Positions 5,363-50,461 of a stretch of 64,000 bases of DNA are shown here, in pieces. The DNA is taken from the IMG/VR virus record IMGVR_UViG_3300028920_000001, positions 362,961-426,960 of that record. The stretch is one strand, 5' to 3'. Below the pieces are notes generated by a model that was not told the DNA's origin, did not search any database, and saw only the letters and a list, made by a program, of their open reading frames with translations. Made by a program: the position numbers and the translations under genes. Every line of letters starts with the position of its first letter. Position 1 is the first letter of the stretch.

Positions 5363-6286
5363 TTATTTCTCCATCTGTTCGTTCCAGAGTTCTACGACCT
5401 CCCACGCTTCATTTACAGCGTGATATTGTTTAACCAGCTTGTCACTTCCATTGTTCCGATCCGGATGATACCTTGCGGCCAATCTTTTGTAAACCGATCT
5501 GGCTCTTTTAATATCGACTTTATGTCTACCTCTAGGTCTAGAGATACCGAGGGTTTCGCAGGCGTTACGGATGGCAGTAACAGTAATAGTGTCGGTGTCA
5601 GAAGGAGTGAAATCCCGCCTAAGATTTCTAATTTTCTTGAGAAGATCTTCATAGGTGACGCGGACTTCGTACTCGAAATCTTCAACTAGCCCTCTTCTTA
5701 CATCAGGTTCAATACCTTCTAATCTTACATTGACGAATGTATCTGTTAACGCCTTGATACTGGCGTAAAACATTCGGGCGTTGTCGGCTCTAAGATCTTC
5801 AGGATTGATTTCTGGAATTGAAGGTTTTGTTTTTTTAGATTTAGGTTTTTTGGGTGGTCGTCTTCGATGAATATACCCGTCTTTATTAGGATAATCTATG
5901 TATTTATCTGAAAAATATTCCTCAAGGAATTCTTTTAATTTGGTAGGATCTCCTTTGGCTTTTTTTCCAAGAACATAAGCTGTAGCCAGGGGCATTTTTC
6001 TAACCGCGATGGCATCCCATAGTGGTTTGGCTAGATCCCCCATTAATAAAATTCCGGCTCTCTTGGCAGGGCCATATGTATTTTTTGCTCCAATTTCTAC
6101 AAACCATTGACTTCTTCTTAGAGGAGTTTTATCTCCTTTGTCACGTCGGTTAATGCTATAGAAGGACCAAACTTTTCTTTCAAGTTTAGCTATTTTATAT
6201 TGATTGGTTGGGATGTCTTTTTCATACTCTTCAAGTAATTCAAGGATTAGCTCTTCTACATGCTTATCAAGGTTCTGCAGATTCAT
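5363..6286 (-). CDS. J-domain (DnaJ-like) protein with HTH-like N-terminus (cassette gene B2)
   Basis: C-terminal ACETLGI…ARSVYKRLAARYHPDRNNGS…YHAVNEAWEVV with intact HPD motif; paralog of 7685-8548. Confidence 0.85.
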   Translation of the reverse strand: MNLQNLDKHVEELILELLEEYEKDIPTNQYKIAKLERKVWSFYSINRRDKGDKTPLRRSQWFVEIGAKNTYGPAKRAGILLMGDLAKPLWDAIAVRKMPLATAYVLGKKAKGDPTKLKEFLEEYFSDKYIDYPNKDGYIHRRRPPKKPKSKKTKPSIPEINPEDLRADNARMFYASIKALTDTFVNVRLEGIEPDVRRGLVEDFEYEVRVTYEDLLKKIRNLRRDFTPSDTDTITVTAIRNACETLGISRPRGRHKVDIKRARSVYKRLAARYHPDRNNGSDKLVKQYHAVNEAWEVVELWNEQMEK

Positions 6287-7163: not shown

Positions 7164-7688
7164 TTATTCTTTTTCTTCCTGGACTGGAGGCAACAGTTTC
7201 TGAATTCGATCATCAGAAATCAGGTTACTGATTTTCTTGACATTACGGACGAAGCTACGAAGTTTACGACCTTCAGGATTTGAGGTTGAAATCTTACGGG
7301 CATCGATCATGCCGAGGCTATTATCAACACTAACCTTGGCTGAGGCTAATCGCTTAGTACGGTCAGCTAAATCAAATCGAGCTTTATCTTCATCATTGAC
7401 AGTGGCACGGTAGCCAACTCCGCGTTGGCAGATATACCCACGTTGATATTCTTTGCGTAGAAGATCACGGGCTCGAGTCATACATGCCCGTACGCTATCT
7501 GCTTCCTTGGAAGTAGCACGTGGTGTATGATTATAACCATTAATGGCTTTTACGATTTCCTGTGCCGGGAAATACTGATACCGCAAATTCTTAGCGGCCC
7601 AGTCGAGGAAATGAGCAACACGTTGAGTTAGGCTCATCCCAGGAAGTGACTGGTAATCCGCTACTGCCGCCTTTCGTTTCTTGGTCAT
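7164..7688 (-). CDS. Basic 174-aa protein, putative winged-helix + coiled coil (cassette gene C1)
   Basis: VRACMTRARDLLR…ICQRGVGYR resembles the OmpR-type wing motif; paralog of 4835-5362; 4-nt overlap with the upstream gene. Confidence 0.8.
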   Translation of the reverse strand: MTKKRKAAVADYQSLPGMSLTQRVAHFLDWAAKNLRYQYFPAQEIVKAINGYNHTPRATSKEADSVRACMTRARDLLRKEYQRGYICQRGVGYRATVNDEDKARFDLADRTKRLASAKVSVDNSLGMIDARKISTSNPEGRKLRSFVRNVKKISNLISDDRIQKLLPPVQEEKE

Positions 7689-8548
7689 AGCTTCTCCTTA
7701 TTCAAGGAATCATTGTATTCCTTGAGAATTTCGTGTGCTCCTACTGCTTCTTCAAACAAATCCCTAGTCTCTTCATTGCCACCGTGAGCATCAGGATGAT
7801 ACAACCTGGTGAGTCTTTTCATTTGTTTAGTAGCTTGTTTTAGATCTATTGGTTGATTAATTGGAGGCGAATCAATTTGTAGGATTTTACAAGCGCGAAT
7901 CAATTTTTTTCGATCTATTGTAGTTCCGAATTTAATTTTGCTTTTTGCGGCTCGGGCAGCTCTGGATTGCCAACCCATGATTAATGTTTTCAAATCAATT
8001 TCAAATTCTCTTAGAAGATTATCTTTTTCAATTTCAAGTAAATCTCCGAGTTTTCCTTCAAGATGATCAGTGATCATCATTCTGATTTGTGCCCAGAATG
8101 GTTTATCTCCGTTTTCTCGAACAATTAAACCAATCCCAGTTTCAGTTTTTCTTTTAATGATTGGAAATTTTTTCTTAATTTGTTTTCCACTGGGGAGTCG
8201 TGCTTCATAGGATTTATTTTCATATTTATTGAATTCAATATTTAGTGCTTTTTCAATTGGTTCTCCTCGTCTTTTAGCTGTAGTGATTATTCGATAAATA
8301 GTATGAAAAGGCATTCCATTTTCAAGTCTTTCCCAAAGAGGACTTGATAATCTAGGTGGTAACTTATAAATTGACCGTCGAGTTCGATATTGAATATCAG
8401 TGATTCCGAGAGTATGAACGACAGTTTTGGCTGCTCTTTTACTGTTTTGGATACCTTTATAATGTTTCCAAAGGGTATACTCGAATTCAGCTTTCTCCTC
8501 TTGGGTGGAAAGTTTCTGATATTCTTCCACTAATTGACTCGTGTTCAT
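7685..8548 (-). CDS. J-domain (DnaJ-like) protein with HTH-like N-terminus (cassette gene B1)
   Basis: C-terminal ACKILQI…ATKQMKRLTRLYHPDAHGGNEETRDLFEEAVGAHEIL with intact HPD motif. Confidence 0.85.
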   Translation of the reverse strand: MNTSQLVEEYQKLSTQEEKAEFEYTLWKHYKGIQNSKRAAKTVVHTLGITDIQYRTRRSIYKLPPRLSSPLWERLENGMPFHTIYRIITTAKRRGEPIEKALNIEFNKYENKSYEARLPSGKQIKKKFPIIKRKTETGIGLIVRENGDKPFWAQIRMMITDHLEGKLGDLLEIEKDNLLREFEIDLKTLIMGWQSRAARAAKSKIKFGTTIDRKKLIRACKILQIDSPPINQPIDLKQATKQMKRLTRLYHPDAHGGNEETRDLFEEAVGAHEILKEYNDSLNKEKL

Positions 8549-10392: not shown

Positions 10393-10799
10393 TTTTAAGG
10401 GTTGTTCTTGACAAAATAAATGCGGGGTCACCGCCGGCCGTCCAATATCAAAAAAATGAAAAGGATAAGTGTCTTATTTCAGTTGATGATAAGACAGCTG
10501 CTACACCTTGGTCTAATGTAAAAGATACTACTTTTTCAGTCCCTTTACATCATTTAGATGCGAATGAAGCTAAACAATTTTTAAAGGATCGATTTGCTTG
10601 CTTGAATGAAGATGGTTGTATTATGGTTCCTTATATGAGTCCTGTAAATGGAGAGGTTGTATTTGGATTAGTATATTATCCTAAAAGAACATTCATGTCA
10701 TTTGATAACAATCATAATATGGCACAACCATTTGAACCGAATGTTTTAGTAGATTATTTAATTAATATTATGCTAGTAGATGAAGTTATGGATAACTAA
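10389..10799 (+). CDS. Hypothetical protein ending in VDEVMDN
   Basis: Start moved from 10374 to the in-frame ATG at 10389, which overlaps the upstream TGA (ATGA). Confidence 0.75.
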
Positions 10800-11404
10800 G
10801 GATTAGCTAAATCAGTAGTATTTCCAGTATCAGCTCGAGCCTTCAGTTTTCCATCTCCTGAGTCTGCCCAAACATACCAAGAACCAGTAGGTGGGGTTCC
10901 AGGATCAGAAATTGTTGAAAGTTCCAATAATGGACCCAATACTCCGGTAGCCCCTTGAGGTCCTGTAGCACCTATTGGGCCCGTTGGACCTATCGGTCCA
11001 GTTACAATTGACCCTGTTATTCCTTGTGGACCTACTGGCCCTGCTGGTCCAGGTGATCCCTGAGGACCTGCTGGTCCAGGTGGACCGATCGGTCCTTGTA
11101 TTCCCTGTGGACCTTGGAACTGCTGGATTTGTGGATCTACTGTGTTATTCTGAAGGAATCGAATAGTGAAGCCATATTCAAAAATATTAGATACTTGAGT
11201 ATTTATACTGGTGATGGTGACTTGAGAAATTGACCACTCATCAGGAGATAGGCTCAGGGTATTAAATATTTGTCTGTAGTTTTCCGGTTTATTTAGTTCT
11301 GTAACAGGATTAGGTAAAATCGCATTTGAGGTTAGGGAAACAAAGGCGTTGACTACATTATTATAATTTGAAGTTAGTTTTTCAACGCCTACGTTCGTAG
11401 TCAT
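10796..11404 (-). CDS. Short collagen-like (Gly-X-Y) protein, possible fibre or decoration protein
   Basis: Central [16 protein letters not shown]…GATG tract between small N- and C-terminal domains. Confidence 0.8.
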
Positions 11405-11834: not shown

Positions 11835-13382
11835 ATGGGACTATTACGTACAGCCGGTTCATACCTCAGCGCACTTTCCACAGGAGAGTACGAAATCCCT
11901 AATCCTCTGGCAGCTGCGGTCAATTATGCCATTGATTCATATTTTGCTAAGAGAGATGAACGGGCTCGGATAGCTGAAGCTAATCGTAAAGAAATGCCAA
12001 TGGACCTTGATGTATATCTCAAGGAAGTTTGGCTTGGATGTGAAATTCATAAGGCTATCAATCTTTCAGGTAGTTATCCGGCATATGCTAAAGCTGTTAA
12101 TGCTTGGGCATTCACTCGAATGTTTACTGCGTATGCTGGAGCGAATGCTTCGTATGAGATAGTTCCGGTTCTAGATCAATCTGAATATAAAGATTATTTG
12201 AAGAGTAACCGAGAATATAGAACTCAATATGAACCTATAAATATTAGTTTGACCCAAGCTGTCACTCTTCCGGTATACGGGACTTTCTTCGTTAAGAATC
12301 GAAGGACTGGAGCCCATCTAATAATTGCGTTTGACTTCTGTTACTATGGAATGGGATGCAGCGTTAGTGTGATGGCTCATTCTCACGGCCAGCATGAAGC
12401 TGAAGCCTTCCTGGCCGATTTGACTGGTTCAATTCAGGCCAATAACATTTATTTCAAGAGTTGCCTCTCATTCAATAGAGGATACCTTGATTTTCATTAT
12501 GTAATTCCAACTACTTGGCAACAGGTAATTTTAAAGGATAGTCTGAGAACGCAAATTCAGAAGAATTCTGTTGGAGTTCTTGATCATATTTCTGATTTAT
12601 CATCTATTGGAATGAGTGCTAATCAAAGTATGCTTTTGATTTCGCCGCCCGGAATGGCTAAGACTACTATGTTCCGGGCTACTTCCAATGAGATTAATGA
12701 GCAAGCTACCCGAATTTGGTGTACTGGTAAGTCTATTTCATATCCGGAACATGTTACTGCGTTGTTTGAAGCAGCTCGAGATTTAAGTCCGTCAGTTATA
12801 TTTATTGAAGATATGGACCTATTTGGTGGTGATCGTAGCACCTTAGGTCGAGATAGTAGTGTTTTGAATGAATTTTTAGCTCAACTTGATGGGACTCAAT
12901 CTAATGCGGGCGTCGTCATTATGGCATCCACTAATGATCTTGACTCTATGGACGAGGCTTTGATCAATCGTCCCGGTCGATTTGGGGTTAAGATTGAAAT
13001 ACCATATCCGGATGCTGAGGATCGGAAGAAAATGCTGGTTTCCTTCTTTAAGGCGTACCATGCAAGGCCGGCTCCTTCAGTTAGCGATGAAGGCTGGGAT
13101 AATATTGTTAAATTAACTGCTGGTTTTACTGGAGATTATATTAGGGAAGTAGCCAAGACAGCGGTAATTAAGGCTGTGGCTGAGGGCCGATGTTTAAGTG
13201 GTCAAGTTAGTTTTACAATGGACGATTTGACTGCAGCTGGGGAACAAGTTTTACAGAATTACCGGATCGGCAAGAGAGCCAAGAGACATCACACTATCTC
13301 TATTGAAGATGGTGGGGAACCCGTAGAGGCAGTAATAGCTTCAGAAGGTCCGAAGGAACCTTCTATGAAGTTAGTATCATAG
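11835..13382 (+). CDS. AAA+ ATPase (classical-clade, single module) with unknown N-terminal domain
   Basis: Walker A variant ISPPGMAKT, Walker B VIFIEDMD, sensor-1 and second region of homology STNDLDSMDEALINRPGRF. Confidence 0.9.
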   Translation: MGLLRTAGSYLSALSTGEYEIPNPLAAAVNYAIDSYFAKRDERARIAEANRKEMPMDLDVYLKEVWLGCEIHKAINLSGSYPAYAKAVNAWAFTRMFTAYAGANASYEIVPVLDQSEYKDYLKSNREYRTQYEPINISLTQAVTLPVYGTFFVKNRRTGAHLIIAFDFCYYGMGCSVSVMAHSHGQHEAEAFLADLTGSIQANNIYFKSCLSFNRGYLDFHYVIPTTWQQVILKDSLRTQIQKNSVGVLDHISDLSSIGMSANQSMLLISPPGMAKTTMFRATSNEINEQATRIWCTGKSISYPEHVTALFEAARDLSPSVIFIEDMDLFGGDRSTLGRDSSVLNEFLAQLDGTQSNAGVVIMASTNDLDSMDEALINRPGRFGVKIEIPYPDAEDRKKMLVSFFKAYHARPAPSVSDEGWDNIVKLTAGFTGDYIREVAKTAVIKAVAEGRCLSGQVSFTMDDLTAAGEQVLQNYRIGKRAKRHHTISIEDGGEPVEAVIASEGPKEPSMKLVS

Positions 13383-13966: not shown

Positions 13967-14245
13967 TTGCCTACTGAGCACGAAGAACCTACTCCGCAAT
14001 TAGCCCCTGGAATTGGATTTGTATTGGAAGGGGATGGGCGGTGGGATGTCCAGACAATTCCGTCGAAGGTAGTTGATTCGGCAGAATTTAATGGATATTT
14101 GACTATTCAAGGATATAAATGTGCAGTATTTATCACCCCTGAGGGTGAGCAATGGGCACAGAAGGTATCTGGAACTCCTGCCCCTAAGGGTGATAATGAT
14201 TTGACACAGATGGCTACTAAAATTGCTAATTTAACTTATAACTAA
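13967..14245 (+). CDS. Hypothetical protein
   Basis: 92-aa ORF with TTG start immediately after the upstream TAA; protein-like composition. Confidence 0.55.
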   Translation: MPTEHEEPTPQLAPGIGFVLEGDGRWDVQTIPSKVVDSAEFNGYLTIQGYKCAVFITPEGEQWAQKVSGTPAPKGDNDLTQMATKIANLTYN

Positions 14246-15779
14246 ATTTGTGTTTTTCAGGGATTTTCATTTTAATTAAATTCATTTGATTAGCATATTC
14301 TAATTCGGTTAGTCCGATCTTTTTTCCTTCGTTGTATACCCATTTCTTATTGATTTGATTTCCATTGATATCTAAATATACATGACTAGTAGAAGTTAAT
14401 TTTTCGTATTTCCAATTTGAAGCTTTATATATAGTACCTTCGTGTCCTTGCATTGTGTCAGCAAATGACACTAGTATTTGAATTTCAGGATGACTTGATT
14501 TTATTAATTTAATGACTTGTCCTAAGATTTTGGAAGCTAAATTTTTCTTTTGATATTCCGGATGAATGCAAAATCGATCCAATTCTAATACTTGAGATAC
14601 TGTATAACCCATAGATGTGGCTACTTCTTTCCTGACTACCGGGGAAAATTTACAAATTGCAATTAGTTTATTGTCTAAGTATACTCCATAGTATATTTTA
14701 GCTGTTCTGCCATATTGAGCGTAATGGTATTTTTCGAGGAATATTCGAGTCATTTTAGGATCAGGATTTGATCTTATCAGGATTTGGTCTAAAGAAAAAT
14801 TGATTTGAGTATAATTTATTTTGGTTTTAGTGATTTGTTTATTCAGCCTTTTCCTGATTTCAGTTCGAATTCTATGACAATTGGCACATACTAATTCACA
14901 TTTGGCAATTTCTTGTTTAATAAAATTCAAACTTCGATTTTGGATCTTATTGATTGAAAAAGTTTTATTTTCAAGATGATCAAAATCTAATATCCAGTAT
15001 CGAAAATTCCGTTTGCAATCTGTACATTGTTTATTGTCCTTTTGAGATATTATGTATGCTTTAGAGGTTCTTAATTTTCTATCTAAATTATTATTATATT
15101 GTCTTAAGCAAGTCTTGCAATAAGAATGTCTATATCCAGTTTTAAGAAGAGTAAAATTGTTAACGTGCTTAGATGTTTGACATTTGGCACAAAATTTAAC
15201 TGGATCTGAGGCTAATAAAATCGGAATTTCATTTATTTTGGGTTTGTATATTCTATTTTTATTAGTATCTATTTCGGTTTCTCTTGTAAAAGTTTCATCT
15301 CGATGACAATTGGCACATATTAATTCACATTTAGCAATTTCTGTTTGAATTCTAGAAATTTTCTTTTCATATAACTTAGAAATATTTGCAACTTTAGTAT
15401 TTAGCTGAAGATGATTAAAATCCATTACGCATTGTGGATAAATTTTTCCACATTTGGAACAAGACTTATTAAGTTTTTCTTCTCTAATATACTTGTATGA
15501 TCTTTGTGCAGTCTTTTTGTGCATTCTTTTTTCTCGTTCAGGATTATCCTTTCTCCATCGTTTAATTTTCTTTTTATGACATTCTTTACAAATTTGTCTG
15601 AATTGATAATTTTGAACAAATTCTCGGAGTTGTTTAGGGTCTTTACAATATTTACAAATTTGTATGAGAGATAAATTTTCAGAATAAAATTGCTGATACT
15701 CTTGGTTTTTCTTTTGATCTAATAATTTTCTTTGTTGTTTTTCTTCAGGTGTTCGTTTCATCCCAATACCATTATACAT
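14226..15779 (-). CDS. Tandem HNH-type endonuclease/zinc-ribbon protein fused to a Mom-like GNAT DNA-modification domain
   Basis: Two CxxC…DF[ND]H…CEL[IV]CANCHR units, two CxxC…CxxC ribbons, and C-terminal ELDRFCI…ILVSFADTMQGHEGTIYKASNWKY. AT-rich and antisense to the tail operon. Confidence 0.8.
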   Translation of the reverse strand: MYNGIGMKRTPEEKQQRKLLDQKKNQEYQQFYSENLSLIQICKYCKDPKQLREFVQNYQFRQICKECHKKKIKRWRKDNPEREKRMHKKTAQRSYKYIREEKLNKSCSKCGKIYPQCVMDFNHLQLNTKVANISKLYEKKISRIQTEIAKCELICANCHRDETFTRETEIDTNKNRIYKPKINEIPILLASDPVKFCAKCQTSKHVNNFTLLKTGYRHSYCKTCLRQYNNNLDRKLRTSKAYIISQKDNKQCTDCKRNFRYWILDFDHLENKTFSINKIQNRSLNFIKQEIAKCELVCANCHRIRTEIRKRLNKQITKTKINYTQINFSLDQILIRSNPDPKMTRIFLEKYHYAQYGRTAKIYYGVYLDNKLIAICKFSPVVRKEVATSMGYTVSQVLELDRFCIHPEYQKKNLASKILGQVIKLIKSSHPEIQILVSFADTMQGHEGTIYKASNWKYEKLTSTSHVYLDINGNQINKKWVYNEGKKIGLTELEYANQMNLIKMKIPEKHKFSYKLN

Positions 15780-15836
15780 TTCTCAAAATAAAATTAATCA
15801 GTTAAGATTCCTATGCTGTTTATTAAAATGAGAAGT

Positions 15837-15841
15837 AGGAG
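15837..15841 (+). promoter_or_regulatory. Shine-Dalgarno site of tail tube gene
   Basis: AGGAG 5 nt upstream of ATG at 15847. Confidence 0.7.
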
Positions 15842-15846
15842 AAAAT

Positions 15847-16530
15847 ATGGCACGTCAAGCTGAAGAGACTTATATTTATCGTCGTGGCGCTTCTCCAAAT
15901 ACGCGCGTCGCCATTAGTCAGAAGAATCGAGTTTTCTCGATTCCTTACGGCTCAACTACATTTAAACAAGTTGGCGTATTGTCAACATTTGATTATAATG
16001 AATCTCGTGCCGTAGATCCAGTTCGTGGAGTTGGTTTCGGCGATAAGATTCAAGAGCTGGTTCCTGGTGTGACTGAGCCGATGACAGTCACCCTTAATCG
16101 GACTCTTCTTTACACTGCTAGTTTGGCGCAGGAGCTCGGTTATCGAGGAGGAGTGGATGGTTTGGTCCGTTCGCTTCGTCACCATAAATGGCCGTTTGAT
16201 CTCCGATCCGAGTTGGTATTTTCTGAGTTAGTCTCTCATTATGACACGGCCCACTTCCAAGAGGGCTTGGCAACAGGTGGCGTGATCCCGGTACAGGACG
16301 GTAGTACTAATTTTGCTATGGTGACGTACTTCGAGGCGTGTTGGCTAAATTCCATTTCGATCAGTTTCCCATCGGATTCGGCGATCGTAATGGAAGATTG
16401 TTCGGCCACGGCTACGGACGTGACTGATGGAACTGCTCGGTACGAGCTTAGTCCTGATGGTTATGGTGATCTCATGGAATCTGGTAACAACCCGATCCTG
16501 GGTGCTGGTTCCAGGTTGTTCACTTCATAA
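15847..16530 (+). CDS. Tail tube protein
   Basis: 227 aa; QVGVLSTFDYNESRAVDPVRGVGFG…ELVPG…TVTLNRTLLY…YFEACWLNSISI pattern typical of myophage tubes; strong RBS; upstream of chaperones and tape measure. Confidence 0.8.
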   Translation: MARQAEETYIYRRGASPNTRVAISQKNRVFSIPYGSTTFKQVGVLSTFDYNESRAVDPVRGVGFGDKIQELVPGVTEPMTVTLNRTLLYTASLAQELGYRGGVDGLVRSLRHHKWPFDLRSELVFSELVSHYDTAHFQEGLATGGVIPVQDGSTNFAMVTYFEACWLNSISISFPSDSAIVMEDCSATATDVTDGTARYELSPDGYGDLMESGNNPILGAGSRLFTS

Positions 16531-30754: not shown

Positions 30755-33022
30755 ATGGGAAAAACAGAAGAAGCTAAAGCTAGATATCGGGCGATGCATA
30801 ATATTGCATCAACACAAGATCCGGTCAGAACTACTAAACAGCAATCCCAAAATGCTGATGATGCTAAGGCTTTCCTATGGATAGGGCGGATTCTCCATGT
30901 AGATGTGGAGACTATGGTTTGTTCTATTCAGATGGAATCAGGGCAGGGAATCTGGCATGATGTTCCTTTACCTGCTCCTGGAGGAGGTGGCCCTAGATCT
31001 TGGTCAGGAGTGATTCCAGAACAAAATTCGCGTGCTTTGATTGGATGGAAAAAATATGGAAATCGAGGCCATAAGCCCTATATCATTACATATTGGACGA
31101 TAGGGACATTTTCAGCTCGAGAATTTGAACCATTTTCAACAGTTGATCCAAATGACGCAAATTCAGTTTTGACAGCAGATGCCGATTTAGCTAATTTTCC
31201 AGAATTAAATTTTAATATTATTAGATTAAAGTCTAGAAAAGCTTATGCTGGAGACTGGATTGCAACTTCTAGTGGAGGAGCTCATGCTCAATTAGATAGA
31301 GACGCATATTTAACCAATCGAGCTAACAATGAATTTAGATTACGAGATTCTGATCAAACTAGTATTCATCAGACAGTAAATGAATTTACTACTAATGCTG
31401 CCGGATATTATCGAAGAGGATTGATTAAGAGGAATGCATACAATTTTCAATTAGATTTAGCTCTTCCTCTTTATGATTATGAAGAACAGGATTTTGATGA
31501 ATTTGTTGATAGTCGAATTATTACTGGTACAGATAATCCTCAGTACACTTATTTAACTAAAGTTGATACTCTTTCTCCTGCTTACAGTAAATTACGAGAA
31601 TTTGAATTAATTAATGAGGATGGAACTCCGGTATTTCCGAATAATCCGGATGATTTGGTTTATCCGTATGTTGTTACTCCTGATGGACAACGGATTAGTT
31701 ATGTGGTTAGAGGAGAGCATGAAACCAATTTTAATCAAACTAACGAATGCTATGTTGAAGATAGAATAGAAATGCGGCATGTTAGTGATGGAATAATGGC
31801 TGTCACTGAGGAGGGCGATGGATTTCAAATTGATAGAATTTCACCAGTTTTCATTGAAGATGTGAAAGGCACAATTGTCGGAAATGATCCATATACGGAG
31901 GCAGGACGTAAAACATATAAACGAGTAGTTAAAATGAGAGTGTTTGAGAAGGAAGAACAAAGTCTTCCTTCCAATACTCCTGTATTTGAACCGATCGATA
32001 CGTTAAAACGGCCTAATGACACTGATACTGTGGCTTTGGCTCGTTTGTTTAAAGTTCAGTGTCCTGCTGAGGGTAGTAGTTCGAATCAATATGCTTTTGG
32101 AATTTCTAAGGAGGGGCAAGTATTTTTACATTTACCCAAAGCAACGGTTGGTGAAACACGGGGTAGATCTCTTGATGCAAATATTATGGGAGCTGTTAAA
32201 GCTATCCTTGGATCAGATGGTAGTCGTAAATCAATTGATTTAACTACAAGTGGTGGGATTAGAGCTAAATTAGGCACGTTAGTAGATGATACTGATCCAA
32301 ATAATCCAGAAAATGTTTCTGCGGATTTTGAATTTGATGGCGTAGTCAGATTAAAATTCAATGGTCCGAAAGCGATAGAAAAGATAGTTGAAGGGAGTGA
32401 AACCACATTTTGTAGTCAAACTTCTGCTAGAGTGGCAGGAGATGTTACTGACATTGCCCAGGGTGGTTCTGTTACTGCTGAAGGAACTAAAGTACGACAT
32501 ATTGCTGGTGATGGAGGATATACTCGTCTAGTTGGTGGCGATTCCGGGATGACTCATCTTGGTAAAACTGATCGACAATTCGCTCAAGATCGAACATCTA
32601 CATTTGCAGTTAATGATACTAAATTAGTACTAGCCGGGGTAGATTCAACTACAGTAGTAGCTGGTAGTATGAGTAGGACAGTCACTACCGGTAGTATTTC
32701 ACATAATGTCGCGACTGGAAATCATAGTATCACGGTTGGAGTTGGTAATGCTTCTTTAACTACAGGTACTGGAAATGTATCGGTAGCAGCTGGATCAGGT
32801 AATGCTTCTTTAGCTGCGGGTGCCGGGGCTGCAAGTATTACTGCAGGTGCTGCCGCTTCTTTAGTTGGTGGCACTGTCGCTAATGTTACAGCACCACTAG
32901 TTAAAATTGGAACGGTGCCTGTTGGTGTGTGCGTGGCTGGAGTTCCCGGTCCTCCCGGTCCAATGTTAGACTATGTAACCGGTTTACCATTGAGGGGTAT
33001 ACCAACTATATTGGTAGGATGA
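30755..33022 (+). CDS. Baseplate central spike (gp5/gpV-like)
   Basis: N-terminal OB-fold-like IGRILHVDVETMVCSIQM…VIPEQNSRALIGW; C-terminal ~9-residue periodic beta repeats (SITVGVGNASLTTGTGNVSVAAGSGN). Confidence 0.75.
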   Translation: MGKTEEAKARYRAMHNIASTQDPVRTTKQQSQNADDAKAFLWIGRILHVDVETMVCSIQMESGQGIWHDVPLPAPGGGGPRSWSGVIPEQNSRALIGWKKYGNRGHKPYIITYWTIGTFSAREFEPFSTVDPNDANSVLTADADLANFPELNFNIIRLKSRKAYAGDWIATSSGGAHAQLDRDAYLTNRANNEFRLRDSDQTSIHQTVNEFTTNAAGYYRRGLIKRNAYNFQLDLALPLYDYEEQDFDEFVDSRIITGTDNPQYTYLTKVDTLSPAYSKLREFELINEDGTPVFPNNPDDLVYPYVVTPDGQRISYVVRGEHETNFNQTNECYVEDRIEMRHVSDGIMAVTEEGDGFQIDRISPVFIEDVKGTIVGNDPYTEAGRKTYKRVVKMRVFEKEEQSLPSNTPVFEPIDTLKRPNDTDTVALARLFKVQCPAEGSSSNQYAFGISKEGQVFLHLPKATVGETRGRSLDANIMGAVKAILGSDGSRKSIDLTTSGGIRAKLGTLVDDTDPNNPENVSADFEFDGVVRLKFNGPKAIEKIVEGSETTFCSQTSARVAGDVTDIAQGGSVTAEGTKVRHIAGDGGYTRLVGGDSGMTHLGKTDRQFAQDRTSTFAVNDTKLVLAGVDSTTVVAGSMSRTVTTGSISHNVATGNHSITVGVGNASLTTGTGNVSVAAGSGNASLAAGAGAASITAGAAASLVGGTVANVTAPLVKIGTVPVGVCVAGVPGPPGPMLDYVTGLPLRGIPTILVG

Positions 33023-33753
33023 TGAAAAGGAAATGTTCAAAATGTGGAATTTCTAAGGATGAAAATGAATCCAATTTCAATAGAAGAGGTTATCCTAGAG
33101 TTGGATTTAGGTCTGAATGTAAAGAATGCTCTGCTAAATTAAAAAAGATGTATAGAGCTAACCCATTTGTTAAAAAAAGAGAAGCAACATATGAACATCA
33201 ATATAGAAAGACTGTAATGGGTAAGCTTAAAAAATCTAGACTTGAATCACGTCGAAAAAAAAATATGAAAATTAAAAATCGTAGATTAATTCAATCATTA
33301 AAATCAAATTCATGTACTGATTGTCATATTGTATATCCATATTATTGTATGGATTTTGATCATTTAGATCCGAATATTAAAAAATGGAATATTAATTCAA
33401 TCATGAATAAAGGAACTAATACGATTTTATCAGAAATACAAAAGTGTGAATTAGTTTGTGCTAATTGTCATAGATTGAGGGAATTCCACAGTAATATCAA
33501 ATTTTATGAATCATCTAGATATAAATCAGTATGGGATAGGATTCTTAAGATAATTAAAATAAAAAGTAAACCTTGTATGGATTGTGGAGGTCAATTTCAT
33601 TATTCTCAAATGGATTTTGATCATAAAAACGGAAAGATTCTAGAGGTAGCACGAATGAGGTATTCACCAAGTGTGTTTGATGAAATTAAGAAATGTGAAT
33701 TAGTTTGTGCTAATTGTCATAGAATTAGAACATATCAACGTGCAGTGGGATAA
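33019..33753 (+). CDS. Free-standing tandem HNH-type endonuclease (homing-endonuclease-like)
   Basis: Start moved to ATG 33019 (ATGA overlap with the spike stop). Zinc ribbon CSKC…CKEC plus two CxxC…DFDH…CELVCANCHR units; AT-rich. Confidence 0.8.
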   Translation: MMKRKCSKCGISKDENESNFNRRGYPRVGFRSECKECSAKLKKMYRANPFVKKREATYEHQYRKTVMGKLKKSRLESRRKKNMKIKNRRLIQSLKSNSCTDCHIVYPYYCMDFDHLDPNIKKWNINSIMNKGTNTILSEIQKCELVCANCHRLREFHSNIKFYESSRYKSVWDRILKIIKIKSKPCMDCGGQFHYSQMDFDHKNGKILEVARMRYSPSVFDEIKKCELVCANCHRIRTYQRAVG

Positions 33754-48910: not shown

Positions 48911-50461
48911 ATGACTGAGCAATTTATAAATGCAGCGCAGACTACTATTGATCAAGCAAGTGGGATCACTGCATTTGATTCTTCTGTTACTGTCAAAGAT
49001 GCTAGTTTATTTCCGACTGTTGCTCAATTTCGTATTCTGATTGATGATGAGTTAATGCTGGTCACTGGGGTGGCCGGTAATATCTTTAATATTACTCGTG
49101 GTATTGAGGGTACCACTCCTGCTGAACATGCCCACGGGACGCCGGTTACTCATGTTTTAACTGCCGGTGGCCTCAGTCAATGGGCGATTGACATTATTGG
49201 TCTTACCGGGCCTCAGGGGGCTACTGGAGCACCTGGTGCACCCGGTCCTCAAGGGGCAACTGGTGTTCAGGGCCCTACAGGTCCCACAGGCCCACAGGGT
49301 CTTCAGGGATATCAGGGTACTACTGGACCCCAGGGTCCACAGGGCGCTACTGGTATTCAGGGAATTCAAGGATCGCCTGGAGTCACGGGTGTTACTGGTC
49401 CTACTGGTCCTTTGGGACCAACGGGGCCCTCAGGAGGCCCGGTAGGCCCCCAAGGTAGTCCAGGTGTTACAGGTGCGACGGGACCTCAAGGAAGCCCGGG
49501 AGCTACCGGTCCTACGGGTTCACAAGGAATTCAGGGATCACCTGGCGTCCAGGGACTCATAGGTCCTCCAGGTCCTCCAGGTCCAGCTGGTTCCCAAGGT
49601 GCTACTGGTGTTCAGGGTCCTACTGGGCCTACCGGACCTGAAGGGCCTACCGGACCACAGGGTATTCAAGGTATTCAGGGTACTCCAGGTGTAACAGGAA
49701 TTCAAGGTGCAATTGGTCCAACTGGGTATACCGGTCCACAGGGAGCTACTGGCCCGACTGGTCCAGAGGGCCCTACTGGTCCTTCTGGTGGTCCTATAGG
49801 TCCAACTGGACCACAGGGAGCTACCGGTCCTACTGGTCCAGAAGGCTCGACTGGTCCTACTGGTCCTGCCGGTCCACAAGGGACAGCTGGCCTTCAAGGA
49901 CCGACTGGTGCTATTGGACCCACGGGTGGATTAGGCACTGGAGCTACGGGTCCACAAGGTTCGCCTGGAGTAACTGGAGCTACTGGTCCTACAGGACCAC
50001 AAGGATCGCCTGGAGTAACTGGACCACAAGGTGTGCAGGGAAGTCCAGGAGTAACTGGAGCTACTGGACCTACTGGACCTGCCGGAGCTCCACAGGGCAG
50101 TCCAGGTGTAACCGGTGCTATCGGTCCGCAGGGTGTAACAGGAGCTACTGGACCTGCCGGTCCGCAAGGGCAACCTTACTTACAAATTAACCAAGATATA
50201 AAGACAGCTAGCTATGTTGCGACATATGGTGAGATGATTCTTTATAATCCTGTAGCAAGCTTTTCAATCATTCTTCCTACTCCTCTTGGATATCTGGGTC
50301 AAGAAATCGGAATGAAGAATGTTACTGATTCAGTGAATAAACTTAGAGTTGCTGCTACGGGGGGAGCTCAAATTGATGGAAGTGCATACGAAGAATTAGC
50401 TTCTGCCCGGACTTCCAGAATCTATAAGAGTATTGGTACTGGTTATATAGTTATTTTGTGA
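48911..50461 (+). CDS. Collagen-like tail fibre protein
   Basis: About 100 Gly-X-Y triplets (GPT/GPQ/GAT-rich) between an N-terminal DDELMLVT…TRGIEGT…H domain and a small C-terminal domain. Confidence 0.85.

What the first reader, a model, noticed from the sequence alone, without database searches (positions are those of the whole stretch)
14226..15779. Tandem HNH nuclease fused to a Mom-like adenine-modification domain
Seen: one 517-aa AT-rich antisense ORF arranged as zinc ribbon, HNH-like (DFNH…CANCHR), zinc ribbon, HNH-like (DFDH…CANCHR), then a GNAT-like domain with ELDRFC and SFADxxQGHxGTIYKASNW. Established: phage Mu Mom is a GNAT-fold enzyme that converts adenine to N6-carbamoylmethyladenine and protects DNA from restriction; HNH domains cut DNA in homing endonucleases. 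Inference: a single-chain cut-and-protect element. It could be a restriction-modification-like system using a non-methyl mark against competing phages or host DNA, or a homing endonuclease carrying its own immunity. Alternatively the Cys-rich units act only as DNA-targeting modules for the modifier.
Basis: partly seen in the sequence, partly recalled or inferred. Interest (0 to 1): 0.8.

Follow-up and report, generated by a model that had tools for sequence, protein, structure and literature searches.

The report
Mobile tandem-HNH–Mom cassette in jumbo phage
An uncultured giant phage carries a swappable gene that joins two DNA-cutting (HNH) modules to a Mom-type DNA-marking enzyme; nuclease–Mom fusions are already known with a different nuclease, so this is a new variant of a known kind, not a new kind of system.

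Summary
Window 14226-15779 (-) is one intact 517-aa ORF (possibly 511 aa from Met7). It encodes two copies of a zinc-ribbon + HNH unit, then a Mom-family GNAT domain (Pfam Mom 99 bits against a cut-off of 27; best PDB fold match is Mu Mom, 8BV8).

About 25 independent metagenomic homologs at 41-47% identity share the whole architecture. Every expected Zn-ligand and catalytic residue is invariant in both HNH units, as are the equivalents of Mom H58, Y59, R111, S124 and D149. All three modules are under purifying selection.

The gene is a low-GC antisense cassette in a hypervariable slot just upstream of the probable tail-tube gene. Related phages carry HNH-HNH-Mom, HNH-HNH alone, one HNH, a Zn-finger-REase-Mom protein, or nothing there. 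Two phages with 96%-identical tube proteins carry different cassettes.

The cut-and-protect idea is already published for REase-Mom fusions in jumbo phages (Iyer et al. 2021). The slot's REase-Mom proteins are homologs of the "Hef-like homing endonucleases" of cultured phages, whose C-terminal domain aligns with Mom.

Best reading: a mobile, homing-type nuclease with an attached, probably active adenine modifier. Function is inferred, not shown. Novelty: new variant of a known kind.

The parts
14226..15779 (-). Whole gene: 517-aa (or 511-aa from Met7) tandem zinc-ribbon/HNH + Mom-family protein; stop codon TAG at 14226-14228
15276..15668 (-). Unit 1 (residues 38-168): zinc ribbon (C42, C45, C64, C67), long helical linker, HNH core (C107, C110, D120, H123, C155, C158, H159). 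The window protein has N122 where >=90% of the family has His
14844..15203 (-). Unit 2 (residues 193-312): zinc ribbon (C197, C200, C221, C224) + HNH core (C252, C255, D265, D267, H268, C298, C301, H302)
14763..14843 (-). Poorly conserved linker (residues 313-339); low model confidence; relaxed selection (pN/pS 0.60 against 0.13-0.21 in the domains)
14229..14762 (-). Mom-family GNAT domain (residues 340-517). Keeps the equivalents of Mu Mom H58/Y59 (H352, Y353), R111 (R402), S124 (S416), D149 (D441), Y159 (Y451) and a two-helix HTH-like insertion (helices 478-487 and 492-498). The Mu R151 position is Met443
15780..15846 (.). 67-bp divergent intergenic region between the cassette and the tube gene. 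It holds a TTTAT motif (15819-15823), shared by filled and empty slots in related phages, and a GGAG ribosome-binding site before the tube ATG
15847..16530 (+). Right flank of the slot: conserved 227-aa gene, probable tail-tube protein, 63-79% identical among phages whose cassette proteins are only 36-47% identical
13967..14245 (+). Left flank of the slot: conserved 92-aa gene whose 3' end overlaps the cassette's 3' end by 20 nt (convergent)

Best explanation
The gene is a free-standing, horizontally exchanged nuclease-modifier cassette of a roughly 427-kb uncultured contractile-tailed phage. Shown: the protein is two zinc-ribbon/HNH units followed by a Mom-family GNAT domain. All three modules are conserved and under purifying selection. 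The gene sits in one fixed intergenic slot, between a 92-aa gene and the probable tail-tube gene, whose content differs between closely related phages. Inferred: the two HNH sites, one per DNA strand, make a break in DNA. The Mom domain transfers an aminoacyl group from charged tRNA (glycine in Mu) to N6 of adenine in double-stranded DNA, giving a carbamoylmethyl-type mark. DNA already carrying the mark, such as the carrier phage's packaged genome, would be spared by the fused nuclease and by host restriction enzymes, while unmarked DNA from a co-infecting relative, a superinfecting phage or the host would be cut. Repair of a cut relative from the carrier genome would copy the cassette into the same slot. 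That would make it a homing-type element with restriction-modification logic, the HNH counterpart of the REase-Mom / Hef-like proteins that occupy the same slot in other phages.
For: Domains: Pfam Mom 99.2 bits against cut-off 27.1. PHROG HNH families E 6e-47 and 5e-37, two stretches each. AF2 model pLDDT 88, whose best PDB match is Mu Mom 8BV8 at E 8e-12, against >=7e-6 for generic GNATs.
Active sites: in 26 homologs at 41-47% identity all Zn ligands, D120/H123/H159, D265/D267/H268/H302 and the Mom equivalents of H58, Y59, R111, S124 and D149 are invariant (Y159 in >=90%). The same Mom positions are invariant across Mu Mom and all fusion types.
Selection: pN/pS 0.21, 0.13 and 0.17 for HNH1, HNH2 and Mom, 0.60 for the linker.
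Mobility: every homolog context examined (L002-L007, L170, L171) lies divergently next to the tube gene. Among 25 non-redundant related loci the slot holds HNH-HNH-Mom (4), HNH-HNH (2, plus 1 with an adjacent REase-Mom), HNH-HNH-REase-Mom (1), Zn-finger-REase-Mom (4), a single HNH (6), or no nuclease (7, two nearly empty). L032 and L034 have 96%-identical tube proteins and about 80%-identical flanking DNA, but cassettes with no nucleotide similarity and 34% protein identity. GC is 0.28 against 0.40-0.44, with steps at the gene ends. The C-terminal partner of the HNH module changed at least 3-4 times on well-supported branches.
Precedent: the slot's REase-Mom proteins are homologs of Hef-like homing endonucleases. 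Phage U5 Hef has endonuclease activity and cleaves nrdB near its own locus (PMC2988022, PMC3322345). Cut-and-protect was proposed for REase-Mom fusions (PMC7824862).
Against: No experiment exists on any member of this family. Cleavage, modification, donor, target motif and homing are all inferred.
Mom-less tandem-HNH genes sit in the same slot (L024, L032, L170) and are close relatives of Mom-bearing ones, so the nuclease can exist without a fused protector.
Mu Mom's essential R151 is not conserved (Met443 here), and the dimer-interface W48 does not align with a Trp.
A trans-acting mark cannot by itself tell apart two genomes replicating in one cell; discrimination would have to come from history or timing.
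The window protein has Asn122 where the family has His.
The single-unit model gave no significant PDB fold match (best is the Gme HNH nicking endonuclease 4H9D, E 0.69), and Pfam's HNH model did not hit.
The cassette's GC tracks each host genome's GC (0.27-0.67), so transfers are not frequent or recent between distant genomes.
Confidence: 0.45

Rival explanations
1. A dedicated single-chain restriction-modification weapon, as Iyer et al. proposed for REase-Mom fusions. Mom marks the phage's own DNA and the HNH units degrade host or superinfecting-phage DNA. The slot variability reflects arms-race turnover of an accessory hotspot, not homing.
For: Published prediction for the sister architecture (PMC7824862). 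Both activities appear intact. Several nuclease-Mom paralogs of different nuclease class occur in one genome: P0001 and P0097 on the same contig, and five momylating enzymes in PA5oct. The slot also holds non-nuclease accessory genes, such as a nucleotidyltransferase in L018.
Against: Mom-less tandem-HNH genes occupy the same slot, which would be self-destructive for a frequent cutter unless another Mom protects in trans. The sister REase-Mom proteins are homologs of Hef, for which site-directed cleavage next to its own locus is reported. No PADLOC defence model matches.
Confidence: 0.2
2. An ordinary free-standing HNH homing endonuclease in which the Mom-like domain is only a DNA-binding or target-recognition module, through its HTH-like insertion and basic cleft, and no longer modifies DNA.
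For: Homing endonucleases normally pair a nuclease with DNA-binding modules. Plain HTH domains are the second most common partners of this Mom subfamily. In one cultured Hef-like protein (Shigella phage vB_SdyM_006) the D149 equivalent is Asn and Y59 is Leu. Mu R151 is not conserved in any fusion.
Against: In this family H58, Y59, R111, S124 and D149 equivalents are invariant, and Y159 nearly so, over deep divergence, and the domain shows pN/pS 0.17. That is hard to explain for a mere binding module.
Confidence: 0.15
3. The Cys-rich HNH-like units are catalytically silent targeting modules, and the protein is simply a sequence-directed anti-restriction Mom enzyme.
For: HTH-Mom fusions show that Mom domains are often given extra DNA-binding modules. 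There is no significant solved-structure match for the unit. Asn122 replaces the family's His in unit 1 of this protein.
Against: The putative general-base His (H123, H268), the metal-ligand His (H159, H302) and the Asp residues are invariant in both units. The tandem-HNH module exists alone as a 300-340-aa protein in the same slot, which makes no sense for a targeting module without cargo.
Confidence: 0.1
4. The GNAT domain acts on something other than DNA, for example aminoacyl-tRNA as in TacT/AtaT toxins, or a protein.
For: The substrate of a GNAT cannot be predicted from fold (authors' own caveat in PMC13219725). Pfam Acetyltransf_1 also matches weakly (E 1e-5).
Against: The Mom family score is far higher than any generic GNAT score. 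The best fold match is Mom by six orders of magnitude. The Mom-specific HTH-like insertion is present. The consistent fusion partners are DNA nucleases and DNA-binding domains.
Confidence: 0.05

Closest known systems
REase-fold-Mom fusions of jumbo phages (Iyer, Anantharaman, Krishnan, Burroughs & Aravind 2021, Viruses 13:63)
   Same: A C-terminal Mom-family domain fused to an N-terminal DNA endonuclease in a very large phage. Several paralogs occur per genome, and a cut-and-protect reading has been proposed. This genome also has one (P0097), and related phages carry one in the very same slot.
   Different: The nuclease here is a tandem zinc-ribbon/HNH (beta-beta-alpha-Me) pair, not a Vsr/MTES_1575-type REase fold. 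Among the 150 closest Mom-domain representatives, about 93 have a REase-like domain and 8 the tandem HNH. The Mom domains of the slot's REase-Mom proteins are a more divergent subtype, about 30% identical.
Hef / Hef-like homing endonucleases (phage U5 Hef; Campylobacter phage NCTC12673 Hef168; LIMEstone1 F-LimIII/VII/VIII/X; Klebsiella K64-1)
   Same: Free-standing nuclease genes inserted between conserved phage genes, multi-copy and polymorphic. One LIMEstone1 copy also sits next to the tail-tube gene. Their C-terminal domain aligns with the Mom domain with R111, S124 and Y159 equivalents conserved. Their homologs occupy the same slot as this gene in related phages.
   Different: Hef nucleases belong to the Vsr-like EDxHD family (PMC3239194), not HNH. 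Hef has experimental support for cleavage and this family has none. Some Hef-like proteins have lost the D149 equivalent.
Phage Mu Mom (PDB 8BV8; Silva et al. 2026)
   Same: Same Pfam family and best structural match. Catalytic H58, Y59, R111, S124, D149 and Y159 and the HTH-like insertion are conserved.
   Different: Only about 18-20% identical. Mu Mom is a stand-alone 241-aa dimer under Com/Dam control in a temperate phage. R151 (essential in Mu) and W48 (dimer interface) are not conserved here. Donor and target motif are unknown.
Free-standing HNH homing endonucleases of phages (T4 MobE, I-HmuI type) and actinophage HNH endonucleases of phrog_2255
   Same: HNH catalytic core with CxxC zinc site; intergenic, antisense, AT-rich, presence/absence polymorphism. 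The single unit is 30-39% identical to annotated actinophage HNH endonucleases.
   Different: Here the unit is duplicated in tandem in one chain and carries an enzyme domain rather than NUMOD/HTH binding modules.
Type IIG/IIC single-chain restriction-modification enzymes (e.g. MmeI, BcgI; from general knowledge)
   Same: Nuclease and base-modifying domain in one polypeptide, so cutting and protecting share DNA recognition.
   Different: Those use SAM-dependent methylation and PD-(D/E)XK nucleases and are cellular defence genes. This one would use an aminoacyl-tRNA-dependent GNAT and HNH sites, and it is phage-borne. No homology is implied.

Membership tests
Mom family (Pfam PF25680; Mu Mom-type DNA adenine N6 modifiers) | Sequence profile match above the curated threshold | tested here: met
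   99.2 bits against gathering score 27.1, E 3e-28, residues 342-514; phrog_1384 Mom-like E 2e-29
Mom family | GNAT fold closest to Mom, with the Mom-specific HTH-like insertion (Mu 175-209, essential) | tested here: met
   Foldseek best hits 8BV8 chains B/A, E 8e-12 and 1e-11, TM(target) 0.65, next GNAT E 7e-6. Two helices, 478-487 and 492-498, lie between the last strands. The region aligns across all fusions
Mom family | Catalytic residues R111, S124, D149 (essential) and H58, Y59, Y159 (strongly reduced activity when mutated) | tested here: met
   R402, S416, D441, H352 and Y353 are invariant in 26 homologs and Y451 is kept in >=90%. All six positions are invariant in the 14-sequence alignment that includes Mu Mom
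Mom family | R151 (essential in Mu) and W48 (dimer interface) | tested here: not met
   The R151 position is Met443 here and varies in all fusion Mom domains. An invariant His446 sits at the Mu R154 position. W48 aligns with Lys. These residues are Mu-specific rather than family-wide in my alignments
Mom family | Transfers glycine from Gly-tRNA(Gly) to N6 of adenine in dsDNA, giving N6-carbamoylmethyladenine | not testable with these tools
   Needs LC-MS and in vitro reconstitution as in PMC13219725
HNH (beta-beta-alpha-Me) endonucleases | Profile match to HNH families | tested here: met
   phrog_2255 E 6e-47, phrog_3106 E 5e-37, phrog_4234 E 3e-14, each with two stretches; endonuclease VII phrog_1035 E 3e-5. 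The nearest Atlas clusters for one unit are HNH endonuclease families, 0.94-0.95. Pfam PF01844 itself did not hit
HNH endonucleases | CxxC...D-x-x-H (general base)...CxxC-H (metal ligand) on a strand-strand-helix core | tested here: met
   C107/C110, D120, H123, C155/C158, H159 and C252/C255, D265/D267, H268, C298/C301, H302 are invariant or nearly so. Predicted strands 119-123 and 151-155, then helix 156-169; likewise 264-268, 294-298, 299-318
HNH endonucleases | Significant structural similarity to a solved HNH nuclease | tested here: inconclusive
   Single-unit model pLDDT 91. Best PDB hit is the Gme HNH nicking endonuclease 4H9D at E 0.69, probability 0.66. Cap5, PacI, Cas9 and type I-E HNH appear among non-significant hits. 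Profile against PDB sequences: 4H9D E 0.11, McrA E 0.3
HNH endonucleases | Metal-dependent DNA cleavage | not testable with these tools
   Needs biochemistry
Free-standing homing endonuclease genes | Presence/absence or replacement polymorphism at one fixed intergenic site between conserved genes in related genomes | tested here: met
   Same slot in all contexts. 25 related loci have 6 kinds of content, including two nearly empty. Cassette replacement between L032 and L034 with 96%-identical tube proteins
Free-standing homing endonuclease genes | Cleaves the cassette-less allele near the insertion site and is copied in by recombination | not testable with these tools
   No cultured host or phage. 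Flanking nucleotide sequences are too diverged to infer a target site
Hef-like (EDxHD / Vsr-like) homing endonucleases | Vsr-like EDxHD nuclease domain | tested here: not met
   No MTES_1575/Vsr/DUF559 match in this protein. Its nuclease modules are HNH. It shares only the slot and the Mom-type C-terminal domain with Hef-like proteins
Restriction-modification-like single-chain systems | The modification made by the protein blocks its own nuclease | not testable with these tools
   Needs cleavage assays on modified and unmodified DNA. Indirect counter-evidence: Mom-less nuclease versions exist

The most novel reading that the evidence does not exclude
Nuclease-Mom fusions as a whole, meaning this tandem-HNH form together with the widespread Hef-like 'homing endonucleases' of T4-like, ViI-like, Campylobacter and jumbo phages, are homing elements with epigenetic immunity. 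They use an aminoacyl-tRNA-dependent adenine hypermodification to pre-mark the carrier genome, so that only naive genomes are cut and converted. That would be a selfish-element strategy merging homing and restriction-modification, with a non-methyl mark that has gone unnoticed in many cultured phages.
Probability: 0.2. Interest if true: 0.8.

Novelty: new variant of a known kind. Interest (0 to 1): 0.5.

Why it matters
Mom's chemistry (glycine from charged tRNA onto adenine in DNA) was only worked out in 2023-2026 and has been studied only for the stand-alone Mu enzyme. This survey indicates that, for the Mom subfamily found here, stand-alone proteins are the exception: 9 of the 150 nearest representatives. 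Fusion to a DNA nuclease is the rule.

The tandem-HNH form shows that the Mom module has been combined with at least two unrelated nuclease folds in one genomic slot. That argues for a functional reason to couple cutting with this mark.

The analysis also connects two literatures that seem not to cite each other in the searchable library: "REase-Mom restriction-like systems" and "Hef-like homing endonucleases". The second group includes cultured, tractable phages (Campylobacter, Klebsiella, Acinetobacter, Dickeya, Shigella). In those phages one could test directly whether a homing nuclease carries an active DNA hypermodifying domain.

If both activities are real, these proteins are also candidate tools: a sequence-directed non-methyl adenine modifier linked to a nickase pair.

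Tried and rejected
1. Assembly or frameshift artefact: rejected, because 25 further sequences from independent assemblies have the same uninterrupted architecture.
2. Near-identical or annotated relatives in GenBank phages: none. Megablast of 8 kb found nothing, and no record covers >=80% of the protein. Cultured phages hold only stand-alone Mom-like proteins at <=30% identity to this domain.
3. NCBIfam and PADLOC: no matches.
4. A solved-structure anchor for the HNH unit: sequence profile against PDB gave only chance CxxCH (cytochrome c) hits and sub-threshold HNH/McrA hits. Foldseek of a confident single-unit model gave no significant hit.
5. Conserved core gene of the phage clade: rejected, since it is absent from many close relatives and from all 50 loci of the more distant clade.
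6. Flanking repeats, target-site duplications or att-like sites: nothing convincing, only AT-rich 12-16-nt matches.
7. Defining a homing target by aligning filled and empty slots: intergenic DNA is too diverged. Only a short TTTAT motif upstream of the tube gene is shared.
8. Phage-encoded tRNA(Gly) as a cofactor source: no tRNA genes in the window; the rest of the genome was not available.
9. Host clue from cellular genomes: only one small MAG contig (L088, binned with Methylobacter) has the HNH-to-Mom architecture, probably a mis-binned phage fragment.
10. The original Hef paper (Sandegren et al. 2005) and two Aravind-lab papers were not held. Statements about Hef rest on secondary sources.
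Full report
**1. The observation**

Window 14226..15779 (minus strand) is a single open reading frame of 517 aa with an ATG start. A >=90%-identical cluster member is 511 aa, and most homologs begin at the position of Met7, so the real start may be 15761.

The gene is antisense to every neighbouring gene. Its GC content is 0.282, against 0.435 and 0.402 for the flanks. The composition steps sit exactly at the gene's ends. Its 3' end overlaps the 3' end of the upstream 92-aa gene by 20 nt. Its 5' end lies 67 bp from the start of the next gene.

**2. Domain anatomy**

- **HNH units.** PHROG HNH-endonuclease families match twice each (phrog_2255 E 6e-47; phrog_3106 E 5e-37), and an endonuclease VII family matches weakly. 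The two halves of the N-terminal 330 residues are 32% identical to each other (E 5e-17). Each unit is a CxxC-x18-CxxC zinc ribbon, a long helix, then a CxxC...D-x-x-H...CxxC-H core.
- **Mom domain.** Residues 342-514 match Pfam PF25680 (Mom) at 99.2 bits against a curated cut-off of 27.1. Generic GNAT models score far lower.
- **Structure.** An AlphaFold2 model built on 26 homologs is confident within domains (mean pLDDT 88) but not in their mutual arrangement (pTM 0.50). Its best match in the PDB is the crystal structure of Mu Mom, 8BV8 (E 8e-12, TM 0.65 on the target). That is about six orders of magnitude ahead of ordinary GNATs.
- **Weak point.** A confident model of one HNH unit (pLDDT 91) found no significant PDB match. 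The top hit is the Gme HNH nicking endonuclease (E 0.69), and several other HNH nucleases appear among the non-significant hits. A sequence profile against PDB gave only chance CxxCH matches to c-type cytochromes and sub-threshold HNH/McrA hits. The HNH assignment therefore rests on the PHROG profiles, the motif geometry, the predicted strand-strand-helix core and language-model neighbours, not on a solved relative.

**3. Not an artefact, and conserved**

The large protein database returns about two dozen full-length homologs at 41-47% identity and 98% coverage. They come from JGI, ENA, Logan and NCBI assemblies, several on contigs of 127-377 kb. In the 26-sequence alignment the following are invariant:

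- all eight zinc-ribbon cysteines;
- C107, C110, D120, H123, C155, H159 in unit 1 (C158 is kept in >=90% of sequences);
- C252, C255, D265, D267, H268, C298, C301, H302 in unit 2;
- in the Mom domain H352, Y353, R402, S416, D441 (Y451 in >=90%).

With Mu Mom added, these Mom positions are the equivalents of H58, Y59, R111, S124, D149 and Y159. Silva et al. 2026 found those residues essential or strongly required (PMC13219725). Two Mu features are not shared. The essential R151 is Met here and varies in every fusion Mom domain, and the dimer-interface W48 has no counterpart. One oddity of this particular protein is Asn122 where at least 90% of the family has His.

In the closest pair for which I hold DNA (L033/L034), synonymous sites are saturated. 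Non-synonymous change is low in all three modules (pN/pS 0.21, 0.13, 0.17) and high in the linker (0.60). All three modules are therefore being maintained.

**4. Genomic setting**

The window comes from a roughly 427-kb viral contig (IMGVR_UViG_3300028920_000001). The gene to the right (15847-16530, 227 aa) is probably the tail-tube protein, by structure and feature neighbours to Phi812 and T4 gp19-type tube families. A baseplate-hub-like lysozyme protein and collagen-like fibre proteins lie downstream. The nearest cultured relative of the tube protein is an Acidobacteria jumbo phage at 40% identity. The host is unknown.

**5. A hypervariable slot**

Every homolog whose context I fetched lies in the same place and orientation, divergent from the tube gene. 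This holds for four Mom-bearing homologs, a Mom-less one and an HNH-HNH-REase-Mom one.

Using the tube protein to fetch 80 viral loci, I found the order AAA ATPase, 168-aa gene, 92-aa gene, [slot], tube, 333-aa gene, 395-aa gene conserved in the 30 closest. The slot's content is not conserved. Among 25 non-redundant loci:

| Slot content | Loci |
|---|---|
| HNH-HNH-Mom | 4 |
| HNH-HNH without Mom | 2 |
| HNH-HNH plus an adjacent Zn-finger-REase-Mom gene | 1 |
| HNH-HNH-REase-Mom fusion | 1 |
| Zn-finger-REase_MTES_1575-Mom protein (~650 aa) | 4 |
| Single short HNH gene | 6 |
| No detectable nuclease next to the tube gene | 7 |

Of those seven, two are nearly empty (277 and 442 bp) and one holds a nucleotidyltransferase. 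The 50 loci of a more distant clade have nothing of the kind within 7 kb.

The sharpest case is L032 against L034. Their tube proteins are 96% identical and their flanking DNA is about 80% identical, up to the end of the 92-aa gene and again from about 22 nt inside the tube ORF. Between those points one has a 309-aa tandem-HNH gene and the other a 520-aa HNH-HNH-Mom gene. The two share no nucleotide similarity and only 34% protein identity.

Slot genes have lower GC than the rest of their locus in 13 of 14 loci. They still track each genome's overall GC (0.27-0.67), so they are long-term residents of this phage group rather than recent arrivals from far away.

**6. Modularity**

A maximum-likelihood tree of the tandem-HNH module shows that its C-terminal partner changed at least three to four times on well-supported branches. 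The partner is either the strong-Mom type, nothing, or REase plus a divergent Mom. The window's module groups at 98/96 support with two HNH-HNH-REase-Mom proteins and a Mom-less one.

From the Mom side the picture is simpler. All tandem-HNH Mom domains fall in one moderately supported subclade, together with a few one-unit or truncated forms. This suggests one original HNH-Mom fusion followed by losses and replacements.

**7. How common is the fusion?**

An exhaustive search with the Mom domain alone found 2264 representatives at E <= 1e-3 and 146 at E <= 1e-30. Of the best 150:

- 9 are stand-alone;
- 8 have two HNH units;
- 8 have a partial unit;
- 125 have other N-termini.

Pfam finds REase-fold nuclease domains in those 125 (MTES_1575 26, Vsr 12, DUF559 10), HTH DNA-binding domains (about 12) and classical HNH (3). 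A more sensitive, locally built REase profile flags 93 of the 150. So nuclease-Mom is the normal state of this Mom subfamily, REase-Mom dominates, and tandem-HNH-Mom is a minority lineage of about 5%.

In species-representative bacterial and archaeal genomes, only one small MAG contig shows the HNH-to-Mom architecture. The same phage genome has a second fusion, P0097, with a weak REase match plus Mom, in its replication module.

**8. What is already known**

Iyer et al. [quoted passage not shown] They propose that momylation protects phage DNA while the nuclease attacks host or superinfecting DNA, and they note that one phage has five such enzymes (PMC7824862). I found no mention of an HNH-Mom fusion in the searchable literature.

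**9. The Hef connection**

The Zn-finger-REase-Mom proteins of the slot match PHROG families annotated "HNH endonuclease" and "homing endonuclease" end to end (E 8e-84 and 9e-61). By tblastn they match the "Hef" and "Hef-like homing endonuclease" genes of Campylobacter, Vibrio, Acinetobacter, Klebsiella, Dickeya and other phages, at up to 11 places per genome.

The Mom-like C-terminal 169 aa alone hits 307 cultured-phage records inside such genes. One annotator called the gene a "putative nuclease/acetyltransferase". Two examples:

- **Campylobacter phage NCTC12673 Hef168.** Its centre weakly resembles the solved I-Bth0305I catalytic domain (3R3P, E 0.018). Its C-terminus aligns with my Mom profile (hhalign E 2e-5).
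- **A Shigella T4-like phage Hef-like protein.** It does the same (E 7e-6) but has Asn at the D149 position.

According to secondary sources, Hef of phage U5 replaces mobE between nrdA and nrdB, has endonuclease activity, and cleaves nrdB close to its own locus (PMC2988022, PMC3322345). Hef-type enzymes have been placed in the Vsr-like EDxHD homing family (PMC3239194). In Dickeya phage LIMEstone1 a Hef-like gene also sits beside the tail-tube gene. No paper in the library pairs "Hef-like" with "acetyltransferase". The original Hef paper was not available.

**10. Interpretation**

Shown:
- the architecture;
- its conservation and selection;
- its residence in an exchangeable slot;
- its kinship through the Mom domain and the slot with REase-Mom / Hef-like proteins.

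Inferred:
- the HNH sites cut DNA;
- the Mom domain modifies adenine using charged tRNA;
- the mark protects against the fused nuclease.

I favour a mobile, homing-type nuclease with an attached active modifier (0.45). The rivals, in order, are:
- a non-homing restriction-like weapon (0.2);
- a plain homing endonuclease whose Mom domain only binds DNA (0.15);
- a targeted anti-restriction Mom with silent HNH units (0.1);
- a non-DNA substrate (0.05).

The main difficulties for cut-and-protect are twofold. Mom-less nucleases live in the same slot. And a trans-acting mark can distinguish genomes only by their history, as in restriction-modification systems.

**11. Verdict**

It is a new variant (tandem HNH) of a known kind (nuclease-Mom fusions of large phages). 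Its added value lies in the slot analysis and in linking these fusions to Hef-like homing endonucleases.

Noticed in passing
window 32929-33753 (+): A second tandem-HNH gene (274 aa, two HNH cores, no Mom; phrog_2255 E 5e-38) sits inside the tail/baseplate gene block. It overlaps the end of the preceding 755-aa ORF and has low GC (0.305 against 0.37-0.40 for its flanks). It is probably another free-standing nuclease insertion.
   Followed up: partly
same genome, outside the window (protein P0097, 548 aa): A second Mom fusion (Pfam Mom E 2e-20 plus a weak REase_MTES_1575 match) lies in the replication module, next to primase-like, clamp-loader AAA, 5'-3' exonuclease and sigma-factor-like genes. 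No DNA could be fetched.
   Followed up: partly
L168:1447-2919 (Campylobacter phage NCTC12673 Hef168); L169:1622-2998 (Shigella phage vB_SdyM_006); 307 cultured-phage records: Genes annotated as Hef-like homing endonucleases carry a C-terminal Mom-like GNAT domain with R111, S124 and Y159 equivalents conserved. The Shigella-phage copy has Asn at D149. I found no paper in the library noting this.
   Followed up: partly
window 15819-15823, and the equivalent positions in L009-L036 (alignment A5): A short TTTAT motif about 25-45 nt upstream of the tail-tube start codon is shared by phages with filled and empty slots. It may be part of a late promoter.
   Followed up: no
window 14862-14921 and 15291-15350: The two DNA segments that encode the conserved motif ending in CANCHR in each HNH unit are 83% identical over 60 nt, although the units are only 32% identical as protein. 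This may reflect gene conversion or strong local constraint.
   Followed up: no
alignment A2, between HNH2 and Mom (P0010, P0014, P0017, P0018, P0023, P0024, L026): Some family members have an extra Cys/His-rich insertion of about 25 residues (C-x-C-G ... H ... C) in the linker, like a small zinc knuckle. The window protein lacks it.
   Followed up: no
window 5363-6286 (-) and 7685-8548 (-): Two proteins with C-terminal DnaJ (J) domains (E 6e-8 and 5e-5) sit in a minus-strand block of otherwise unknown genes. The region 8-10 kb has low GC (0.34).
   Followed up: no
window 10796-11404 (-), 48911-50461 (+), 49729-50023: Collagen-like tail-fibre proteins with Gly-X-Y-type tandem DNA repeats (periods 27 and 45).
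   Followed up: no
L018:4426-5307 (-): In one related phage the same slot region holds a nucleotidyltransferase (phrog_388, E 3e-51), so the slot is an accessory-gene hotspot and not exclusively a nuclease site.
   Followed up: no
L005:5359-6900 (-); L012, L015, L024, L026 downstream of the tube gene: A second variable position lies just downstream of the tube gene. Several relatives carry another Zn-finger/REase or Mom-like gene there (e.g. a 513-aa DUF4379+MTES_1575 protein in L005).
   Followed up: no
one search hits in Streptomyces, Mycobacterium and Myxococcus phages: The closest cultured-phage relatives of the single zinc-ribbon/HNH unit are HNH endonuclease genes that often lie within or next to phage tRNA gene clusters.
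   Followed up: no
window 11835-13382 (+): A 515-aa AAA+ ATPase (PHROG families of unknown function; Pfam AAA in the homologs) is conserved two genes upstream of the slot in all related phages.
   Followed up: no
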